This document shows positions 50,499 through 58,949 of a stretch of DNA of 64,000 nt, in pieces (position 1 is the stretch's first letter; each line of letters opens with the position of its first letter). The position numbers and the translations under genes are program-made. The notes under the pieces are model-generated. The model saw only the letters and a list, made by a program, of their open reading frames with translations. It was not told the origin of the DNA and did no database searches. The stretch is taken from the IMG/VR virus record IMGVR_UViG_3300044712_001255, positions 62,001 to 126,000 of that record; one strand, 5' to 3'.

Positions 50499-51455
50499 AT
50501 GAGAACTGTATTAATGTTGATGGGTCTTCCGGCCGCGGGTAAGTCAACCTTTGCTAAGGAGCTCCTGCGTAAGGAGCCGAAGCGTTGGAAGCGAGTCAAT
50601 CGAGATGACTTGCGTATTTTGCTTGATGGCGATAACTTCATCAAGGAAAATGAGGAGTTTGTGCGCAATGCACAGGAAGTCCTTATCAAGGAGGCCTTGC
50701 GTCAGGGGTTCGACGTTGTCGTTGACAACACTCATCTCATCTCATCCACCGTGAACAAGCTTCACAAGCTGCTTGAGTCTATTGGAGACGTGAAGGTCAT
50801 TCACAAGGCATTCAATGTATCGGTTGATGAGTGTATCGCTCGCAATGCAAAGCGAGAGGGACGTGCGAAGGTACCCGATAGCGTAATCTTGGGTATGGCA
50901 AAGGGAGCAGGCCTCAATAAGGGACGCAAGCTTCAGGACAAGGAGTTCTATTACCCGCCGCGCGGTTCCGAAGTCTCAGTTGTCACAAATGATCCAGCGC
51001 TGCCCAAGGCGATCATTTGTGACCTTGACGGAACTCTTGCGATCATGGGAGATCGTTCGCCATACGATGCATCTCAGTGTGATGTCAAGGACCATCCAAA
51101 TTGGCCCGTGATTGAGTGCGTCAAGGCAATGTATCGCAGGGGCGTGCATATCATCTTCATGTCTGGACGTGAAGTAAAGGATCGTGCGCCAACAATGCGA
51201 TTCATTGATCAGTGGGTTCAATGTGAACTGTCAAATCCTGATGGCGCTTCTGACTTGTTTCCAATTTCGTATGAGCTTCACATGCGCCAGACTGGTGATC
51301 AGCGAAAGGACGCAATCATCAAGCGCGAGCTATTCCAGGCTAACGTTGAAGGAAAGTATCATGTGATGTTCATTCTTGATGATCGCAATCAGGTCGTGGA
51401 GAATTGGCGTGCCATGGGACTGACAACTTTTCAGGTCGCAGAGGGAAATTTTTGA
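50499..51455 (+). CDS. pseT: Polynucleotide 5'-kinase / 3'-phosphatase (T4 PseT/Pnkp-like)
   Basis: GLPAAGKST, NRDDLR, VVVDNT; HAD domain CDLDGTL, SGR, MRQTGDQRKD, LDDRNQVV. Confidence 0.92.
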   Translation: MRTVLMLMGLPAAGKSTFAKELLRKEPKRWKRVNRDDLRILLDGDNFIKENEEFVRNAQEVLIKEALRQGFDVVVDNTHLISSTVNKLHKLLESIGDVKVIHKAFNVSVDECIARNAKREGRAKVPDSVILGMAKGAGLNKGRKLQDKEFYYPPRGSEVSVVTNDPALPKAIICDLDGTLAIMGDRSPYDASQCDVKDHPNWPVIECVKAMYRRGVHIIFMSGREVKDRAPTMRFIDQWVQCELSNPDGASDLFPISYELHMRQTGDQRKDAIIKRELFQANVEGKYHVMFILDDRNQVVENWRAMGLTTFQVAEGNF

Positions 51456-51748
51456 TGGAAACGCTAGATGCTGAATATCTCAAGACACTTCATACTCGAG
51501 TACTCCTACCCATCTATCAGAGGGCCCGTGGATACTTGTGGACTCGATGGCACGAAGGTGAGCCATACGATCCCGAAAAGCCCACGTACGTAAACGCACA
51601 GTTCTTTGGGTATGAACCATATGGCGTCATTTCCAATATCACGTTGGAACAGATGCGAGCTGAACTTGCCACTCGAGAACATGTGCCCAACAAGGTAGAG
51701 GCAAAGAAGATCAGGCAAGAAAAGGCAAAGGCAAAAAGGAATCGGTGA
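51455..51748 (+). CDS. Hypothetical protein
   Basis: TGATG coupling; basic C-terminus. Confidence 0.6.
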   Translation: METLDAEYLKTLHTRVLLPIYQRARGYLWTRWHEGEPYDPEKPTYVNAQFFGYEPYGVISNITLEQMRAELATREHVPNKVEAKKIRQEKAKAKRNR

Positions 51749-52053
51749 TGTCAGACATTCGTACTTACAATTATCACAATTGGTCACAGTACATTGTGCT
51801 CAAGCAAGAGCAGGTGCCAAAGTCTAGACATTTTGCCGCTATTTTGTTTGATAAATACACGCCGTGTTCAGGCTATGAAAATGAAGGTTACCAAGCAGAC
51901 CCACGCCCTATGACCGTGTATTTTGCCTTCCCAACGAAGGAGCTATTGTCACAATGGGTCCTAGAGGCTACGCAAGACAAAAAGCAGTTCTTCTTCTTTG
52001 AAGTCCCGAAGATGGGCGAGGTAAAGATCAGCGTCAACCTGGAGATAACGTGA
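51748..52053 (+). CDS. Hypothetical protein
   Basis: TGATG coupling. Confidence 0.6.
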   Translation: MSDIRTYNYHNWSQYIVLKQEQVPKSRHFAAILFDKYTPCSGYENEGYQADPRPMTVYFAFPTKELLSQWVLEATQDKKQFFFFEVPKMGEVKISVNLEIT

Positions 52054-52316
52054 TGAGTGAAAGTAAGAATCGTATCACGATTGAGCGCTACAACCAAGTC
52101 CTGTGGTCTCGGGTGTGCCCAGGATGTGGCGAATATACAGTGATTGATGTCATACGACGTAGTAAATCTGACGCTATGTCGAGAGACTCCAAGTTCTTAG
52201 GTAAGTTCCATTGCTGCGGTGGGCCGAATGGACATAAGTGCTGGCACATGAGTTGTCAGTCAGGTGATAAGCCATTGTATGAAATGTTCGGATCAGAATC
52301 ATTGATCAAGACGTGA
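52053..52316 (+). CDS. Small Cys/His-rich protein, possibly Zn-binding
   Basis: CPGC and HCC..HKCWHMSC; TGATG coupling. Confidence 0.55.
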   Translation: MSESKNRITIERYNQVLWSRVCPGCGEYTVIDVIRRSKSDAMSRDSKFLGKFHCCGGPNGHKCWHMSCQSGDKPLYEMFGSESLIKT

Positions 52317-52338
52317 TGATTGTGTATAAATCATAATC

Positions 52339-52524
52339 ATGACAAAACACACGTGGAGCGCCGAAGAGATCATTGGTTACACGCCGCCAGTACCGCGTCC
52401 GATTGGCACTGGATTCAAGACACCGATAATCAAAGTTGAGTGTCTTGAGTGTGGTAAAGTGGTGGCAGGTGATAAGGGATCTGCTAAGCTTGAAAGCGAC
52501 TTGCTCGAAGAAACATGTGTTTGA
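52339..52524 (+). CDS. Small hypothetical protein
   Basis: 61 aa; CLEC motif. Confidence 0.5.
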   Translation: MTKHTWSAEEIIGYTPPVPRPIGTGFKTPIIKVECLECGKVVAGDKGSAKLESDLLEETCV

Positions 52525-52539
52525 CTGGAATGATGCGCA

Positions 52540-53166
52540 ATGACTAAACGCGATCTGTTGTGTATGCGATGGGAAAAGACGCTCTCTTTGTTCCCGAAAT
52601 ATCCAACAAAATCGTACAAGTTGTTTGATGAAATTGTTGTTGCGTATGAAGACAAGCATCGAGTGTACCATTCGACAGATCACCTGTTGCATGTGTTCGC
52701 AACGCTTGATATGTTCTTTCACGATGAGGAATTCCAACTAGAAATTGAACTTGCGTTGTGGTACCATGATTTTGTGTACGTTATCGGGTCCCAACATAAC
52801 GAAAAGAAATCAGCCAACATTGCTGGTGATAGGTTGTGTGGGTTGCTACCGCATACGTTGCATGTAGAACAGTTCATACTAAAAACGCAGCACGCTTACG
52901 AACCCACGGATAGACCTTCTAAGATTGTAGCTGACGTTGATCTTGCAATTTTGGGTGAATCACCAGAAATTTACGAGCACTACGAGCAGGCAGTTCGCAA
53001 GGAATACGCAATGTTTCACGATTATGCGTACAATCGTGGTCGTCGACAAGTTTTGCTTGACTTCTACAATCGTCCAAAAATCTTTCACACCCAAGAGATG
53101 ATCAATTTTGGGTATGAAGATCGTGCACGCATAAACCTTGCAAGAGTTCTCGGTAAGGCGGCGTAA
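52540..53166 (+). CDS. HD-superfamily phosphohydrolase (COG4339-like)
   Basis: HRVYHSTDH, LWYHDFVY, NE..SA, DVDLAILG..Y..YE..VRKEY..GRRQVL..F..R..IF..AR.NL. Confidence 0.85.
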   Translation: MTKRDLLCMRWEKTLSLFPKYPTKSYKLFDEIVVAYEDKHRVYHSTDHLLHVFATLDMFFHDEEFQLEIELALWYHDFVYVIGSQHNEKKSANIAGDRLCGLLPHTLHVEQFILKTQHAYEPTDRPSKIVADVDLAILGESPEIYEHYEQAVRKEYAMFHDYAYNRGRRQVLLDFYNRPKIFHTQEMINFGYEDRARINLARVLGKAA

Positions 53167-53175
53167 GCCACAAAC

Positions 53176-53254
53176 GGAATGTTAGGCGTAGCAGCCCAAA
53201 GCTGCGCTGGGTCAGCCGTAGTCATTCGGCGCAGTTCAACTCTGCGACATTCCG
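53176..53254 (+). ncRNA. tRNA-like element with a canonical acceptor stem and T-arm but a non-canonical D/anticodon region
   Basis: GGAATGT/ACATTCC 7-bp acceptor (8 bp with the flanking C-G), T8-A9, T-arm CGCAG-TTCAACT-CTGCG stacked on the acceptor, G discriminator then CTA. No canonical anticodon loop or D-loop GG. Confidence 0.55.
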
Positions 53255-53256
53255 CT

Positions 53257-54045
53257 ATGAAAGAGATTAGGAAATACGACCGTACACCACACATTCGTGG
53301 GTCACGTTTCCAAAATGGAGACCACGACATGGAGGCTGTGCCATGGGAGTTTCTACGCGGTAAGAACCTCGTAGTCGAAGAGAAGATCGATGGGTCAAAT
53401 TGCGGTATTTCTTTCGATAATGGGCAACTTCTGCTTCAGTCTCGTGGGCACTATCTGCAGGGAGGCCCACGCGAGAAGCAATTCACTATTCTAAAACAGT
53501 GGGCCAATTCAAAGCAAGAGGAATTGTACTGCGTCGCTGGCGAGCGTTACATCATCTACGGTGAGAACATGTACGCAAAGCACACTGTGTTCTACGATGC
53601 ATTGCCTCACTACTTCATGGAATTCGATGTCTATGATATGCAGGAGGGTGTCTTCTTAAGCACCCAGGCTCGACGACAATTGTTGTCTGCGATCAATGTA
53701 AGTTCAGTGCTCGTGCTCGCTGAGCGAAAATTTGACAAGCTCGATGAGCTACGAGCGCTCATAGGTCGCAGTAACTTCATCACTCCGGCGCGGTTACAAA
53801 ATTTGCGTATGGCGAGTGTGTTGGCAGGAGTAGCATTTGAAGATGCTTTGACGCACACAGACATGAATGAAAATATGGAAGGTCTCTACGTCAAGTGGGA
53901 GGAAGACGGGATCGTTAAGGGCCGTTATAAGTTTGTTCGTGATTCATTTACGAACGCAATTTTAGAGCAGGAGACTCACTGGCACGATCGACCCATCATC
54001 CAGAACATGCTGGTGCCGGGTGCATTTGAGAAGATGTTTGAGTAG
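53257..54045 (+). CDS. ATP-dependent RNA ligase (Rnl2-like nucleotidyltransferase)
   Basis: KY.RTPHI, motif I EEKIDGSN, IIYGEN..AKH, MEFDVYD, EGLYVK, RYKFVR. An in-frame ATG also exists at 53179. Confidence 0.88.
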   Translation: MKEIRKYDRTPHIRGSRFQNGDHDMEAVPWEFLRGKNLVVEEKIDGSNCGISFDNGQLLLQSRGHYLQGGPREKQFTILKQWANSKQEELYCVAGERYIIYGENMYAKHTVFYDALPHYFMEFDVYDMQEGVFLSTQARRQLLSAINVSSVLVLAERKFDKLDELRALIGRSNFITPARLQNLRMASVLAGVAFEDALTHTDMNENMEGLYVKWEEDGIVKGRYKFVRDSFTNAILEQETHWHDRPIIQNMLVPGAFEKMFE

Positions 54046-54051
54046 AATGGA

Positions 54052-54894
54052 ATGACTATGGGAAATTATGCTTGGCTAACTGACATTCACCTTGATGCAA
54101 TCGATGACAATCGATTGATGCGACTCGTTGAAGATATCAAGGCGACTCGTCCTGATGGCGTCATCATCTCTGGCGATGTTTCGAATGCTCGTCAGGTTGT
54201 GTATCACCTCTCTGCTCTCGAAAGAGGCGTTCAGCTTCCGATTTACTTTGTGTTGGGTAATCACGATTACTACGGTGGAAGCATTGAAACTGTGCGTAAG
54301 TCGATGAAGGACCTTGCACGGTTGTCGCCATACCTGAAGTACTTGCCCAATTCTGGGTACGAGATGCTCAATGAATCGACTGCAATTGTTGGACACGATT
54401 GTTGGTATGATGCAAATTGGGGTGATGCAAAGGGATCGTCAATGATCTTAAATGATTGGCACCTCATTCATGAGTACAGACAATTCGCGGGGCCGTCGAT
54501 GTATGGGCGTGGTGATAGTAGACCAAGTCGACAGAAGACGATTGAAATCTCGCAGCAGCTTGCTCGAGAAGGAGTCGTGCACCTGCAGGATTCGATTAAG
54601 AAGGCGATGCGCTACGCTAGGAACGTTGTTGTAGTGAGCCACGTGCCACCCTTCAGGGAGTCACACATCTACAATGGCAAGATTGGAGATAACAACGCTC
54701 ATCCGTGGTTCACTTGCAAGATGCTTGGTGACATGCTGACAGACGCTGCAAAGGCGTTTCCAGATAGAAACATCATTTCGTTGTCTGGACACACTCACGG
54801 TAGGTACCAGGGTAAGTTTGCCAACAACCTAGAGGTATTTGTGGGTGAAGCAGCGTACAGCAACCCCAAGGTGGAGCGCAACTTTCAGCTATGA
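54052..54894 (+). CDS. Calcineurin-like metallophosphoesterase (CpdA/Icc-like)
   Basis: TDIH, SGDVS, LGNHD, SHVPP, SGHTH. Confidence 0.9.
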   Translation: MTMGNYAWLTDIHLDAIDDNRLMRLVEDIKATRPDGVIISGDVSNARQVVYHLSALERGVQLPIYFVLGNHDYYGGSIETVRKSMKDLARLSPYLKYLPNSGYEMLNESTAIVGHDCWYDANWGDAKGSSMILNDWHLIHEYRQFAGPSMYGRGDSRPSRQKTIEISQQLAREGVVHLQDSIKKAMRYARNVVVVSHVPPFRESHIYNGKIGDNNAHPWFTCKMLGDMLTDAAKAFPDRNIISLSGHTHGRYQGKFANNLEVFVGEAAYSNPKVERNFQL

Positions 54895-55658
54895 CAGTCG
54901 TAGAATTCCCTGATGGGTACGCTATTCTTGGTGATGGAACGTCACCAACGACAGTATCTCAAGCCATGGCGTGGGTCGGTGATGGACAGTTCATTGTGCA
55001 CACTGATCCGCCCTATGGTGGCATCTTAAAAGAGGATTGGGATAGGCAGTTTCCTGAAGTTCAGCATGCTGCGTGGATGTTGGATTGGACAGTTCTTTGG
55101 ACAGATCATTTACCCATTGGAGGTACGGCGTACGTGTGGGGAGGCGTAGGAACGTATCGCAATCGACCATTCTTTCGCTACCTGTGTGACGTCGAGTTCA
55201 GAGCGAGCGTGAAGATTCAGAACTTTATCACATGGGGAAAGAAGAGGGGCATCGGGACCGCGTACAATTATCTCTTCACTCGAGAAGAATTGGCCTTCAT
55301 GGTGAAGGGAGGAAAAAACGCCAAGCCCTCCGTGTTCAATGTGCCGCTGCTTGACGAGCTGCGGGGTTACGAGGGATACAATAAGCAGTATCCTGCAAAG
55401 AGCGCTTACAAACGTCGTACAAATGTGTGGACTGACATCACTGAAAAGTTGCGTAACAAGGTGCACGTTGCTGAGAAGCCCGTGTCGCTTTGCAAGGTAC
55501 CCATCGGCGCAAGCACGAATCCTGGACATTGGGTGATCGATCCGTTCGCTGGATCTGGTGCCACGGCGCTAGCTGCAAGAGAACTTGGTCGTCGATTCAT
55601 TGTGGTTGAAAATGATCCTGAAGCGTTCGCAGTGTTGGTGAAGCGACTTGGAAAATGA
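54891..55658 (+). CDS. DNA N6-adenine / N4-cytosine methyltransferase (beta class)
   Basis: DPPY catalytic motif before H..EKP and DPFAGSG SAM motif. Confidence 0.9.
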   Translation: MTVVEFPDGYAILGDGTSPTTVSQAMAWVGDGQFIVHTDPPYGGILKEDWDRQFPEVQHAAWMLDWTVLWTDHLPIGGTAYVWGGVGTYRNRPFFRYLCDVEFRASVKIQNFITWGKKRGIGTAYNYLFTREELAFMVKGGKNAKPSVFNVPLLDELRGYEGYNKQYPAKSAYKRRTNVWTDITEKLRNKVHVAEKPVSLCKVPIGASTNPGHWVIDPFAGSGATALAARELGRRFIVVENDPEAFAVLVKRLGK

Positions 55659-56583
55659 TCAAATGTCAATAGAAGAAGTGAAGTTTCAACATTATGCGTG
55701 GTCTCCCGAACAACGAGATGCGTTGAGGGATATTTTTCGTAATTGTTTGTCTTCTCATGAGGCTAAGACATTGTCAATTGCATTTGAAGCTGGTGGGATG
55801 ATTTGTGGTGGTGCAGCGAGGCGTATAGCTGCATCGCTGTTCAAGATCAATGCACGACCACGCACAAATCATGTTGATTACGTTTCATCATATTTTCGCG
55901 ACGGTCGTCATGACTCTTTCAATAAACCTGGCGATATTGACGTATTCTTCCCAACAGATGAGTCAGTGACGCGATTTTGGCGCAACTTCTCGGTGTCGAG
56001 CATTCCAAGCGTTGCGCATGTCTCTGAATCTGTGTTGGGATATGCACGAAACATTCGCATCAACACAGGTGTGAACATTCAGGTAGTAAAACCTGTGTGT
56101 GGGTCTACTGTTGAACATCAGTTGGCGTCATTTGACATCTACAATGCAATGATTGGGTTGAATGCGCATAAGGCGATCATTCCTGACGAGTGGCATTACC
56201 TTGAACAACATTCAATGTTGCATGTTCACAGATTTCAGACTGATTATCAGCTGAAACGCATCATCAAGTGGATGACGCGGCAACAATACGAGTCGCTTTC
56301 TCCCAAAACGGCGTCAGAAGTTGGCACCTATGCGTTTGAGTTGATGGAACGTATCAAGGAGGCTGATGGTCTTCCAACTCCTTGGAAGGACGTAAAAATT
56401 ACTGTCGATACAGTACGTCATGCGCTTTATCCGTTGCTTACGCACCTCACGAATGACCAGTTACTTTTGTTGTCAACCGTCATGATGACTCGAGATAGCT
56501 ACGGCAATATCGGCGCCAACCCGGCAATGGATATAATTCAGGATCGATCAAAGCAAACAATTTGTAGTGCAAATAGTGACTAA
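55648..56583 (+). CDS. Nucleotidyltransferase-like protein (CCA-adding / poly(A) polymerase head-like)
   Basis: GGAARR, GDIDVFF, IQVV, SFDIYNAM (compare RRDFTINAM), R..KW..R. Confidence 0.5.
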   Translation: MENDQMSIEEVKFQHYAWSPEQRDALRDIFRNCLSSHEAKTLSIAFEAGGMICGGAARRIAASLFKINARPRTNHVDYVSSYFRDGRHDSFNKPGDIDVFFPTDESVTRFWRNFSVSSIPSVAHVSESVLGYARNIRINTGVNIQVVKPVCGSTVEHQLASFDIYNAMIGLNAHKAIIPDEWHYLEQHSMLHVHRFQTDYQLKRIIKWMTRQQYESLSPKTASEVGTYAFELMERIKEADGLPTPWKDVKITVDTVRHALYPLLTHLTNDQLLLLSTVMMTRDSYGNIGANPAMDIIQDRSKQTICSANSD

Positions 56584-57794: not shown

Positions 57795-58949
57795 ATGGAG
57801 TTGAAGCTGAAATTACGCCAGCTACAGGACGTTGCACGGACGACCTTAAATGAAGACAAGGCTATCCAAACACTGCGCGAGGAGGCTCGTAAGGTGTTTG
57901 GCCCTACGATGCGTGTCGATGGTACGCCAGTTGCTCTTGCGACTCGTATCAATGATCACCTTTCGTACCTTGAACACACCGGAGCTGATGTTGACGTACG
58001 AGTCAAGACGTCTGTTTTGACTGCGTTGATGAAGCATCCAGTAGCCGAAGTACGCAAAGTGGCTGCTCGGTTGTTGCCTGAAAAGCTTGCGTTGAACATG
58101 ACTCAGGACAGGGATGCTGGCGTAAGAGCTACAATTGCCCGCCGCATGCCTGCGCAGATCGTTAAGGAAATGTGCAAACGTTATCCGAACGATGATCAAC
58201 TTCACACCATCTTGTCTGAAGCTGTTGAAGAATTTGATATTCATGGCGATAAACGACTTGGAGATTCTGCAAAAACAAAGACTATTGAGTTGTCTGAGGC
58301 GTGGTACGAGCAACAGGCTCAACGCATCCTCGAAGATTACAATGAATTCAGCAGCGCAATGCCTCGTCAAATTGACAGGCACTGGAACCCGCTTGCTGTA
58401 AGGCGATACGTTGATAGCGTAAGGGCAACGTCTGGCGTCACAATCGACGTTGAGCGTTTACAAAAGGCTGTTGATAAGTTGCTTGAGGACCTTGATGATC
58501 GTAGGGAAGAGAACTACGAATACCGCACTATGCGCGAGGTCAAGGCCTCATTGAAACAACTTGTCAATGAAGACGTCTCAGGCGCTCGTCAAGTGATGCC
58601 AGTTATTTCTGAGGCAGAAGAAGACGTTGTTAAAAATCTTTTGAACTCGCAGATGTCTTCGCATGAATATATGCGTTTCTTCGAGTCAATCTTCAGAGTT
58701 CGTAAGGCAAATGTGCCAGCAGCGATTCGCAAGTATCGTTTGGGTGAAGGAATCTCTCACGATACGTTGGTTCCCATGAAGGCATACTTGCCTCACGGTC
58801 GCCTCGACGAAGTTACTGAACACGCTATTGATCGATACGTTACTGCGTGGTCTGACGCCCAAAAATTGGTGGGCGAGCCACTGCAACTTGGGTGGAACGC
58901 AGACCCAGGTGACACTTCTGTCATTGGATTCGATCTTGCTCTGTTTTGA
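57795..58949 (+). CDS. Hypothetical protein with a short HEAT/LRV-like repeat and many [LI]xE sites; putative internal head or core protein
   Basis: HPVAEVRKVAARLL / DRDAGVRATIARRM repeats; GAGGAG RBS. Confidence 0.6.
   Translation: MELKLKLRQLQDVARTTLNEDKAIQTLREEARKVFGPTMRVDGTPVALATRINDHLSYLEHTGADVDVRVKTSVLTALMKHPVAEVRKVAARLLPEKLALNMTQDRDAGVRATIARRMPAQIVKEMCKRYPNDDQLHTILSEAVEEFDIHGDKRLGDSAKTKTIELSEAWYEQQAQRILEDYNEFSSAMPRQIDRHWNPLAVRRYVDSVRATSGVTIDVERLQKAVDKLLEDLDDRREENYEYRTMREVKASLKQLVNEDVSGARQVMPVISEAEEDVVKNLLNSQMSSHEYMRFFESIFRVRKANVPAAIRKYRLGEGISHDTLVPMKAYLPHGRLDEVTEHAIDRYVTAWSDAQKLVGEPLQLGWNADPGDTSVIGFDLALF

What the first reader, a model, noticed from the sequence alone, without database searches (positions are those of the whole stretch)
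53175..53259. tRNA-like RNA fused directly to the RNA ligase start codon
Seen: a perfect 7-8-bp acceptor stem and a textbook T-arm (CGCAG-TTCAACT-CTGCG), but a non-canonical core (alternative hairpins GCAGC-CCAAA-GCTGC, GCTG-GGT-CAGC, GCCG..CGGC) and no standard anticodon loop. The 3' end is G-CTA, and that A is the A of the ligase ATG (53257); there is no SD between them. Established: tRNA-like domains occur in bacterial Y RNAs linked to RNA repair, and phage Pnkp/Rnl pairs reverse anticodon-nuclease damage. Inference: the element could be a decoy or substrate for host tRNA-targeting defence nucleases. It could also be a processing signal whose 3' cleavage releases a near-leaderless ligase mRNA, coupling ligase synthesis to tRNA processing.
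Basis: partly seen in the sequence, partly recalled or inferred. Interest (0 to 1): 0.75.

Follow-up and report, generated by a model that had tools for sequence, protein, structure and literature searches.

The report
Degenerate tRNA abutting RNA ligase start
An 80-base, serine-tRNA-like remnant in a jumbo phage's RNA-repair operon ends one base before the RNA ligase start codon; host tRNA-processing enzymes probably cut the ligase message free there, but this is untested and no other phage searched has the element.

Summary
Window 53176-53255 has a perfect 7-8 bp acceptor stem, a 5-bp T-stem with loop TTCAACT, and a 3' end G73-C74. T53256 follows, then the ATG at 53257.

It is not chance. 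An acceptor plus T-arm scan of the 324-kb genome hits only 34 tRNAs and this element (0.05 expected). A model built from the phage's four tRNA-Ser genes ranks it first in the window (22 bits).

It is not a working canonical tRNA. ARAGORN at default settings and the Rfam tRNA model both miss it. The D-loop GG, U33 and a 7-nt anticodon loop are absent.

The ligase starts at 53257. About 30 homologues begin at that position, and the 26 upstream codons do not look coding.

The element is an orphan: it is absent upstream of all ligase homologues searched and from five related jumbo phage records.

In this phage and three tRNA-rich relatives, real genes repeatedly start -1 to +7 nt after genuine tRNA 3' ends.

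Best reading (about 0.45): a tRNA-derived processing element that releases a near-leaderless ligase mRNA. The main rival (about 0.33) is an inert tRNA relic. The decoy, Y-RNA and N-terminal-extension ideas have no support. No RNA data could be obtained.

The parts
53176..53255 (+). Whole tRNA-like element: 80 nt, from acceptor position 1 to C74
   Evidence: Top hit of the tRNA-Ser covariance model R1 (22.2 bits, E about 4e-4, full length) and of the Leu/Tyr model R2 (14.9 bits). It is the only hit of the top-half scan that is not a tRNA.
53175..53182 (+). Acceptor 5' strand. Positions 53176-53182 are tRNA positions 1-7; C53175 (position -1) can pair with G73 to give an 8th pair.
   Evidence: Sequence; pairing probabilities 0.98-1.0.
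53185..53208 (+). Inner hairpin 1 (8 bp, 8-nt loop) in the place of the D arm. It lacks the G18-G19 motif.
   Evidence: Minimum-energy fold.
53215..53230 (+). Inner hairpin 2 (4 bp, 8-nt loop TAGTCATT), collinear with the long variable arm of tRNA-Ser.
53230..53246 (+). T-arm: 5-bp stem with a 7-nt loop TTCAACT, which fits TTCRANN.
53247..53255 (+). Acceptor 3' strand (53247-53253), then G73 (53254) and C74 (53255).
   Evidence: N74 is C in 33 of 35 top-half hits of this genome, and none encodes CCA. G73 also occurs in all four tRNA-Ser genes of the phage.
53257..54045 (+). RNA ligase gene (262 aa, PF09414). Its start codon lies 1 nt after C74.
   Evidence: Pfam E = 7e-33. Homologues of 260-277 aa start at the equivalent position. 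Coding score 0.33 bits/codon.
53179..53256 (+). Open 26-codon stretch in frame with the ligase; judged not translated.
   Evidence: Absent from all homologues. Codon score -0.31 bits/codon, lower than 99.94% of 26-codon windows in real genes.
52540..53166 (+). Upstream gene: phosphohydrolase (208 aa). Its TAA stop lies 9 nt before the element.
   Evidence: phrog_19425, E = 1e-26.
50514..51455 (+). Polynucleotide kinase-phosphatase, the first recognisable gene of the RNA-repair cluster.
   Evidence: PF25109 HAD_PNKP E = 2e-47 and AAA_33.
54052..54894 (+). Metallophosphoesterase immediately downstream of the ligase.
   Evidence: PF00149; phrog_1649.

Best explanation
The element is a solitary, degenerate copy of a class-II (serine-type) tRNA gene embedded in the phage's RNA-repair operon.

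It has kept the parts that tRNA-end-processing enzymes read: the acceptor/T-arm minihelix, a T-loop of consensus sequence, and the G73-C74 3' end typical of this phage's tRNA genes. It has lost the parts needed for decoding: the D-loop GG, U33 and a 7-nt anticodon loop.

Shown:
- its tRNA ancestry;
- its position in the largest gap (90 nt) between the kinase-phosphatase gene and the methylase gene;
- the ligase start 1 nt after C74;
- the same kind of junction (start codon -1 to +7 nt after a genuine tRNA) at other genes in this phage and three related jumbo phages.

Inferred: the operon transcript is cut here by host RNase P at the 5' side. At the 3' side it is cut by RNase Z or another 3'-end activity, as for the phage's CCA-less tRNAs. 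This would detach the ligase and downstream genes from the kinase/phosphohydrolase genes. The ligase mRNA would then begin 1-2 nt before its AUG, so it would be translated as a near-leaderless message. On uncut RNA the -34 kcal/mol fold 2 nt upstream of the AUG should hinder 30S binding.
For: - Top-half scan: 35 hits in the genome, 34 tRNAs plus this element, against 0.05 expected.
- The tRNA-Ser model gives 22.2 bits, the best hit in 64 kb. Genuine tRNA-Ser genes of another phage score about the same, 23.8 and 20.1 bits.
- The best pairwise match is tRNA-Ser(GCU): score 56, against 44.5 +/- 3.3 for shuffles.
- The element shares the acceptor start GGAA.../...TTCC with G73-C74.
- C74 without CCA occurs in 33 of 35 top-half hits.
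- Positions invariant in tRNA-Ser are kept at 12 of 14 sites in the top half but 11 of 22 in the bottom half (p = 0.04).
- Ligase start at 53257.
- Homology-supported genes abut tRNA 3' ends: HNH at +3 and +7 in this genome. In relatives: a cytidylyltransferase at +0, a zinc-finger-HNH at +3, a weak Pol-beta NTase match (below Pfam's cut-off) at +1, and a YAcAr SLOG protein at -1.
- ORF starts within 9 nt of a tRNA end: 15 of 171 downstream of tRNAs against 5 of 171 in the antisense control (p = 0.036).
- tRNA-like t-elements processed by RNase P and RNase Z are established elsewhere (PMC1920247, PMC4946936).
Against: - There is no transcript data. No RNA run was listed, so no processing site has been seen.
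- The element is found in one phage only. It is absent upstream of about 45 ligase homologues and from five related jumbo phage records. Selection on it therefore cannot be tested by covariation.
- The loss of the D-loop/T-loop elbow may weaken recognition by RNase P and RNase Z.
- The exact-abutment bin is not clearly above the antisense control (7 vs 4).
- One abutting HNH gene has a GGAGG inside the tRNA 3' strand, so leaderless initiation is not forced even there.
- About half of this phage's genes lack an SD anyway.
- The host, and so its tolerance of leaderless mRNAs, is unknown.
Confidence: 0.45

Rival explanations
1. Inert relic. The element is a tRNA-Ser pseudogene left between two genes by a rearrangement, for example when a ligase gene that once sat behind a tRNA in the array was moved. 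It has no role. The ligase is translated without an SD from the unprocessed operon mRNA, as are many genes of this phage.
For: - It is an orphan with no homologue anywhere.
- The genome holds other decayed tRNA-like sequences scoring 17.8-24.3 bits, below the Rfam cut-off, inside the arrays.
- SD-less starts are common.
- An HNH ORF that matches the N-terminal domain of HNH-ligase fusions sits directly behind a tRNA 168 kb away, which hints at past shuffling of this module.
Against: - All 12-13 pairs of the top half are perfect Watson-Crick and the T-loop fits the consensus, while the decoding half is wrecked. Uniform neutral decay at this divergence would not be expected to spare them.
- A stable fold 2 nt from the AUG should impede initiation if it is never removed.
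- With an intact minihelix it would be hard to escape RNase P even if it were 'inert'.
Confidence: 0.33
2. tRNA mimic acting on proteins. The element is either a decoy or substrate for host anticodon nucleases, or an operator bound by the ligase or other repair enzymes to autoregulate translation, in the way thrS mRNA mimics tRNA-Thr.
For: - It lies inside a kinase-phosphatase / phosphohydrolase / ligase / phosphoesterase cluster.
- It abuts the start codon, so a bound protein would block initiation (inference).
- Jumbo phage RNA-repair systems and Ro with a tRNA-like partner are known (PMC7824862).
Against: - No loop resembles a canonical anticodon loop: U33 is absent and the loops are 8 nt.
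- No TROVE/Ro protein in the genome.
- No Rfam Y-RNA or other family match.
- Not conserved next to any homologous ligase.
Confidence: 0.08
3. An unusual but functional tRNA-type molecule. It would be matured, given CCA and perhaps serylated, because seryl-tRNA synthetase reads the acceptor, G73 and the long variable arm rather than the anticodon. It would not decode normally.
For: G2-C71, A3-U70 and G73 are retained, and a hairpin sits in the variable-arm position. That these are serine identity elements is from my own knowledge.
Against: - Rfam tRNA and ARAGORN at default settings both reject it.
- The C11-G24 pair and the D-loop GG are missing.
- The predicted fold replaces the D and anticodon arms with a different 8-bp hairpin: -33.8 against -19.3 kcal/mol for the cloverleaf.
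Confidence: 0.05
4. The stretch is coding. It would be either an N-terminal extension of the ligase from ATG 53179, or a linker in a phosphohydrolase-ligase fusion made by read-through of the in-frame TAA at 53164. The genome does carry a tRNA with anticodon UUA.
For: The frame is open from the TAA to the ligase. A well-formed tRNA(UUA) exists at genome c313007-313079.
Against: - No homologue has the extension.
- The codon score of -0.31 bits/codon is lower than in 99.94% of real-gene windows.
- Thirty open codons are expected by chance about one time in four.
- TAA ends 71 of 227 long ORFs, so it is an ordinary stop here.
- ATG 53179 is buried in the acceptor stem.
Confidence: 0.03

Closest known systems
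t-elements: tRNA-like processing signals in plant mitochondrial transcripts and in Haloferax volcanii
   Same: They are tRNA-derived folds without decoding function, embedded next to mRNAs. They are recognised through the acceptor/T-arm by RNase P and RNase Z, which define mRNA ends (PMC1920247; PMC4946936 and its ref. 38).
   Different: Those are experimentally mapped and recur in their genomes. This element is a single unmapped copy in a bacteriophage, and it sits directly against a start codon.
Mitochondrial tRNA punctuation with leaderless mRNAs
   Same: Genes abut tRNA ends, so excision of the tRNA creates an mRNA that starts at or next to its AUG. The same junction geometry is seen here at the ligase and behind genuine tRNAs in four jumbo phages.
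   Different: The setting here is a bacterial host and phage, where leaderless translation is a minority route. Only a few per cent of the tRNAs are followed this way, and no ends have been mapped.
Ordinary phage tRNA genes and tRNA pseudogenes in jumbo-phage tRNA arrays
   Same: Shared features are the acceptor sequence type, the T-loop, the G73-C74 end without CCA, and the best similarity to tRNA-Ser.
   Different: The element lies about 100 kb from the nearest tRNA gene and over 140 kb from the main arrays, and fails ARAGORN at default settings and the Rfam tRNA model. Its inner half is refolded into non-tRNA hairpins.
Bacterial Y RNA (YrlA) tRNA-like module with Ro/Rsr
   Same: Both are tRNA-like folds linked to RNA repair or quality control (PMC7824862).
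   Different: No Ro/TROVE gene in the genome, no Rfam match, no Ro-binding helix, and the element is only 80 nt long.
T4 Pnkp/Rnl tRNA-repair pathway
   Same: The neighbouring genes are of that kind: kinase-phosphatase, ATP-dependent RNA ligase and phosphoesterases.
   Different: T4 is not known to carry a tRNA-like element in front of its ligase genes (my own knowledge). This ligase is a 262-aa PF09414 protein of the family that elsewhere occurs fused to HNH domains.

Membership tests
Canonical tRNA (Rfam RF00005 / ARAGORN) | 7-bp acceptor stem closed by a discriminator base | tested here: met
   53176-53182 pairs with 53247-53253, all Watson-Crick, followed by G73.
Canonical tRNA (Rfam RF00005 / ARAGORN) | 5-bp T stem with a 7-nt T-loop UUCRANY, adjacent to the acceptor 3' strand | tested here: met
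   CGCAG-TTCAACT-CTGCG at 53230-53246.
Canonical tRNA (Rfam RF00005 / ARAGORN) | D arm with A14, G18-G19 and A21 | tested here: not met
   There is no GG in any D-loop register, and T stands at position 14.
Canonical tRNA (Rfam RF00005 / ARAGORN) | Anticodon arm: 5-bp stem and 7-nt loop with U33 and a purine at position 37 | tested here: not met
   The only collinear arm has 4 bp and an 8-nt loop with G at position 33.
Canonical tRNA (Rfam RF00005 / ARAGORN) | Score above the detection thresholds of standard tools | tested here: not met
   ARAGORN at default settings finds 0 genes in the window. Rfam tRNA gives no hit at E <= 10 in the region or the genome, while 48 other loci pass the cut-off.
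tRNA-Ser lineage (class II) | GGAA.../...TTCC acceptor, G73, long variable arm; significant match to a tRNA-Ser profile | tested here: met
   R1 gives 22.2 bits with E about 4e-4, against 14.9 bits for the Leu/Tyr model. Pairwise z is about 3.5. The variable-arm hairpin has only 4 bp.
tRNA-like processing element (t-element) | Intact acceptor/T-arm minihelix without decoding capacity | tested here: met
tRNA-like processing element (t-element) | Sits at a cistron boundary or at the end of an mRNA | tested here: met
   It fills the 90-nt gap between the phosphohydrolase stop (53166) and the ligase ATG (53257).
tRNA-like processing element (t-element) | Cleavage by RNase P / RNase Z, with discrete RNA ends in vivo | not testable with these tools
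   No RNA run was listed. The DNA runs only confirm the sequence.
Bacterial Y RNA (YrlA-like) | Ro60/Rsr (TROVE) partner encoded, and a match to the Y-RNA family | tested here: not met
   No PF05731 match in the genome. No Rfam hit other than a chance snoRNA match.
tRNA-Sec | 8/5 acceptor/T helices plus a 6-bp D stem, UCA anticodon loop and long variable arm | tested here: not met
   An 8+5 geometry is possible, but there is no UCA in a 7-nt loop and no Rfam tRNA-Sec hit.
Leaderless mRNA | The mRNA 5' end lies at or within a few nt of the AUG | not testable with these tools
   This is inferred only from the 1-nt spacing between C74 and the ATG.

The most novel reading that the evidence does not exclude
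A group of tRNA-rich jumbo phages uses tRNA punctuation in the mitochondrial manner. Excision of tRNAs by host RNase P and 3'-end enzymes would create leaderless or near-leaderless mRNAs for genes placed flush against tRNA 3' ends. In this phage a decayed tRNA-Ser has been kept outside the array purely as such a punctuation mark, so that RNA ligase synthesis depends on working host tRNA-processing machinery.
Probability: 0.25. Interest if true: 0.75.

Novelty: new variant of a known kind. Interest (0 to 1): 0.45.

Why it matters
If the element is cut as proposed, it would be a phage example of a tRNA fossil kept only as an RNA-processing signal. It would also tie expression of a tRNA-repair ligase to the host's tRNA-maturation enzymes.

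Genuine tRNA genes in four jumbo phages are followed flush by real genes. This hints that tRNA excision may be a general way for these phages to make short-leader mRNAs. My literature searches did not turn up any description of that.

There is a practical point too. Automatic gene calling truncated the ligase to a downstream ATG at 53329. Junctions of this kind are therefore likely to be mis-annotated.

Tried and rejected
- Relaxed ARAGORN calls: rejected as evidence. The same setting gave 14 calls in 16.8 kb of unrelated upstream regions.
- Rfam scan of 52900-53500 at E <= 10: only a chance snoRNA match.
- Repeats: the element has no other copy in the genome.
- Terminator or promoter role: no T-run follows the element. 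A sigma-70-like site at 53043-53070 is no more than shuffles give.
- Near-identical strains for covariation: both DNA runs carry the identical sequence.
- Exact and degenerate pattern scans of viral and metagenome contigs for a T-loop followed by the ligase N-terminus: 23 and 14 hits, none of those examined with a T stem or acceptor. The script that checked the 23 viral hits stopped on an error after 15 of them.
- Homologues of the upstream phosphohydrolase in IMG/VR: none.
- Phage collection by DNA: no match. By protein: only relatives at or below 30% identity for the ligase. The kinase-phosphatase gave no host clue.
- PDB sequence search with the ligase: no hit.
- CCA-adding enzyme in the phage: none found.
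- tRNA-Gly reading from ARAGORN's mitochondrial mode: rejected, because it needs mismatched stems and gives only -13.5 kcal/mol.
- Minus-strand ORF 53330-53085: weak coding score of 0.095 bits/codon, antisense to the ligase; not pursued further.
- The inner half alone is only modestly more stable than shuffles (z = -1.8).

Full report
**What is there**

The window is part of a 324,468-bp IMG/VR virus record (window = positions 62001-126000), a jumbo phage from a rhizosphere metagenome.
- an 8-bp perfect stem (53175-53182 with 53247-53254);
- a 5-bp stem with loop TTCAACT (53230-53246), stacked directly on it;
- inner hairpins that do not form a normal D or anticodon arm;
- then G53254, C53255, T53256 and the ATG at 53257.

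The minimum-energy fold is a four-way junction at -35.6 kcal/mol, z = -3.1 against shuffles. The acceptor and T pairs have probabilities of 0.84-1.0.

**Is it more than chance?**

Yes. I scanned the whole genome, both strands, for a 7-bp acceptor stem, a directly adjacent 5-bp T stem and a TTCRANN loop. This gave 35 hits. Thirty-three are tRNAs called by ARAGORN, one is a tRNA by the Rfam model (32.5 bits), and the last is this element. Sixty simulated genomes with the same dinucleotide content gave 0.05 hits each, under criteria laxer than what the element achieves.

By contrast, the relaxed-threshold ARAGORN call is worthless as evidence. The same setting produced 14 calls in 16.8 kb of unrelated sequence.

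**What kind of tRNA-like thing is it?**

It is not a canonical tRNA.
- ARAGORN at default settings finds nothing in the window.
- The Rfam tRNA model, which finds 48 tRNAs above its cut-off in this genome, reports nothing here even at E <= 10.
- The D-loop GG, A14 and U33 are missing, and the only collinear anticodon arm has a 4-bp stem and an 8-nt loop.

It does look derived from a class-II, serine-type tRNA.
- A covariance model built from the phage's four tRNA-Ser genes ranks the element first in the 64-kb window. The match is full length: 22.2 bits, E about 4e-4, next hit 15.5 bits.
- Genuine tRNA-Ser genes from a distant phage score about the same with that model, 23.8 and 20.1 bits.
- A Leu/Tyr model gives only 14.9 bits, from the top half alone.
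- The best pairwise match among 47 tRNAs is tRNA-Ser(GCU): score 56, against 44.5 +/- 3.3 for shuffles.
- The acceptor begins GGAA and ends TTCC-G-C, as in the phage's tRNA-Ser genes.
- The 3' end follows the house style of this phage's tRNA genes. C74 is encoded in 33 of 35 top-half hits and CCA in none.
- Positions invariant among the tRNA-Ser genes are retained at 12 of 14 sites in the top half but 11 of 22 in the bottom half (p = 0.04).

Thermodynamically, the inner half prefers a new 8-bp hairpin plus a 4-bp hairpin (-33.8 kcal/mol) over any cloverleaf (-19.3 kcal/mol or weaker).

**Where does the ligase start?**

At 53257.
- The product is a PF09414 RNA ligase (E = 7e-33).
- The 16 closest homologues aligned (63-69% identity, most 260-277 aa) and 17 further IMG/VR loci all start 2-7 residues before the conserved K-Y-x-R-T-x-H motif. 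None has the 26-residue extension that ATG 53179 would add.
- Those 26 codons score -0.31 bits/codon in a codon-usage model trained on the phage's long genes. That is lower than 99.94% of equal-sized windows in real genes. The ligase itself scores +0.33.
- An automatic gene call had instead chosen ATG 53329, behind an SD-like GGAG. That start would delete residues that are invariant in the family.
- There is no SD before 53257. However, only 29-47% of long ORFs in this genome have one (background 8%), so this alone is unremarkable.

**Context**

The genes from 50514 to 55658 lie on one strand, mostly overlapping or 4-22 nt apart. In order they are:
- a kinase-phosphatase;
- four small ORFs;
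- a phosphohydrolase (phrog_19425);
- the element;
- the ligase;
- a metallophosphoesterase;
- a DNA methylase.

The 90-nt gap that holds the element is the largest between the kinase-phosphatase gene and the methylase gene. The genome has about 50 tRNAs and a tmRNA. Apart from one tRNA-Met about 100 kb away, they lie more than 140 kb from this site, and the tmRNA about 65 kb upstream. It has no CCA-adding enzyme and no Ro/TROVE protein.

**Conservation**

None was found, but no close relative of this phage exists in the collections.
- The best non-self ligase is 69% identical.
- The only other copies are the same phage in two rhizosphere runs, with identical sequence.
- In relatives the ligase is usually packed against or overlaps its upstream gene, with no tRNA-like fold.
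- Pattern scans of viral and metagenome contigs for a T-loop just upstream of the ligase N-terminus returned only chance matches among the hits examined; my checking script stopped after 15 of the 23 viral hits.
- A single-sequence model of the element finds itself (115 bits) and nothing in five related jumbo phage records.
- One distant relative has two real tRNA-Ser genes 1.1 and 2.3 kb upstream of its ligase.

**A lead from the rest of the genome**

Genuine tRNA genes in this phage are sometimes followed flush by ORF starts:
- an HNH endonuclease 3 nt after tRNA-Leu(UAA);
- another HNH 7 nt after tRNA-Leu(UAG);
- ORFs with coding-like codon usage 2 nt after tRNA-Ser(GCU) and 3 nt after a tRNA-Met.

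Three related jumbo phages with 48-57 tRNAs show the same pattern, and three of these five ORFs pass Pfam's own cut-off:
- a cytidylyltransferase at +0;
- a zinc-finger-HNH at +3;
- an ORF with a weak Pol-beta nucleotidyltransferase match (below Pfam's cut-off) at +1;
- a YAcAr SLOG protein whose ATG shares the A of the encoded CCA;
- an ORF with HNH-like motifs (no Pfam match at E <= 0.001) at +1.

Over 171 tRNAs, ATG-ORFs start within 9 nt downstream in 15 cases, against 5 in a strand-swapped control (p = 0.036). The exact-abutment bin alone (7 vs 4) is not convincing. One of the HNH cases also has a GGAGG inside the tRNA's 3' strand.

Because these tRNAs must be excised to function, the RNA downstream of them necessarily begins within a few bases of those start codons. 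That is the same geometry as at the ligase.

**Mechanism and rivals**

The best-supported reading (about 0.45) is a tRNA-derived punctuation element. Under it:
- RNase P cuts at the 5' side.
- The activity that makes the N73-C74 ends of the phage's CCA-less tRNAs cuts at the 3' side.
- The ligase message is released with a 1-2 nt leader. Uncut RNA keeps a stable fold 2 nt from the AUG.

The tRNA ancestry, the junction and the in-group parallels are shown. The cleavage and the leaderless translation are inferred.

The main rival (about 0.33) is an inert pseudogene left by rearrangement. In its favour:
- the element is an orphan;
- the arrays contain other decayed tRNAs;
- an HNH ORF 48% identical to the N-terminal domain of HNH-ligase fusions sits behind a tRNA 168 kb away.

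Against it stands the perfect top half next to a ruined bottom half.

The remaining ideas rank lower:
- Decoy, Y-RNA-like or autoregulatory mimicry (about 0.08) has no positive evidence.
- A chargeable non-decoding tRNA (about 0.05) is speculative.
- Coding or read-through readings (about 0.03) are contradicted.

**Comparison with known systems, and verdict**

The element works most like the t-elements of plant mitochondria and Haloferax, and like mitochondrial tRNA punctuation (PMC1920247, PMC4946936). It fails membership of canonical tRNA, tRNA-Sec and Y RNA. The surrounding repair genes are the usual jumbo-phage set (PMC7824862).

My four literature searches found no description of phage genes expressed through tRNA punctuation, nor of a tRNA-like element in front of a phage RNA ligase. 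That is weak evidence of novelty.

I rate it a new variant of a known kind. It is of moderate interest because function rests on one genome and no transcript data.

Noticed in passing
Genome G000:C1 275007-275557, 283308-283632, 281467-281712, 275721-276042; relatives L088:1005-1499, L091:2496-2942, L095:428-781, L098:457-876, L106:2179-2673: Start codons of ORFs, several of them homology-supported genes (HNH endonucleases, cytidylyltransferase, YAcAr SLOG), lie -1 to +7 nt after genuine tRNA 3' ends in this and three related tRNA-rich jumbo phages. A Pol-beta NTase match among them is below Pfam's cut-off.
   Followed up: partly
Genome G000:C1 313007-313079, minus strand (L038): A well-formed tRNA with anticodon UUA (Rfam 63 bits, canonical CU-UUA-AA loop), i.e. 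an ochre-suppressor-like tRNA. TAA nevertheless terminates 71 of 227 long ORFs, so there is no sign of wholesale recoding.
   Followed up: partly
Genome G000:C1 283312-283632 (L077:113-433): A 106-aa HNH ORF directly behind tRNA-Leu(UAA) matches the N-terminal part of phrog_24030 'RNA ligase'. It is 48% identical over 62 aa to the HNH domain of an HNH-ligase fusion (P0081). In this phage the HNH and ligase parts are separate genes 168 kb apart.
   Followed up: partly
Genome-wide tRNA genes (e.g. G000:C1 258596-258739, 274766-275007, 282966-283111): None of the tRNA genes encodes CCA, yet 33 of 35 have C at position 74. Many tRNAs abut the next tRNA with no spacer, so the 3' end of one would be made by RNase P cutting the next. 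No CCA-adding enzyme (PF01743) was found in the phage.
   Followed up: partly
Window 53329-54045: The public gene call for the ligase (238 aa) starts at an internal ATG behind an SD-like GGAG (53318-53321). It drops 24 residues that include family-invariant positions, so it is a likely mis-annotation.
   Followed up: yes
Genome G000:C1 49473-49828: A phage-encoded tmRNA with predicted tag ANDNATVLRAAA (ARAGORN). The ANDN start resembles proteobacterial tags (my own knowledge), the only hint at the host.
   Followed up: no
Genome G000:C1 273934-274030, 261086-261157, 272694-272770, 280444-280517: Sub-threshold or weak tRNA-model hits (17.8-32.5 bits) inside the tRNA arrays. They may be decaying or unusual tRNAs.
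   Followed up: no
Window 57888-57967 (+): Second-best hit of the tRNA-Ser model (15.5 bits, E about 0.03). It lies inside a called 384-aa ORF and is probably chance.
   Followed up: no
Window 55663-56583 (+): The 306-aa product after the DNA methylase has no Pfam or PHROG hit in my scans. It carries a 'faint' precomputed Gad2 (anti-Gabija) Pfam flag in the contig table.
   Followed up: no
Window 53043-53070 (+): A sigma-70-like site (TCGACA, 16-nt spacer, TACAAT; 10 of 12 matches) inside the end of the phosphohydrolase gene, about 100 nt upstream of the element. The number of such sites in the region equals the shuffle expectation.
   Followed up: no
L027:158-241 and L027:1321-1405: A distant relative (ligase 41% identical) has two genuine tRNA-Ser genes (UGA, GCU) 2.3 and 1.1 kb upstream of its ligase gene.
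   Followed up: partly
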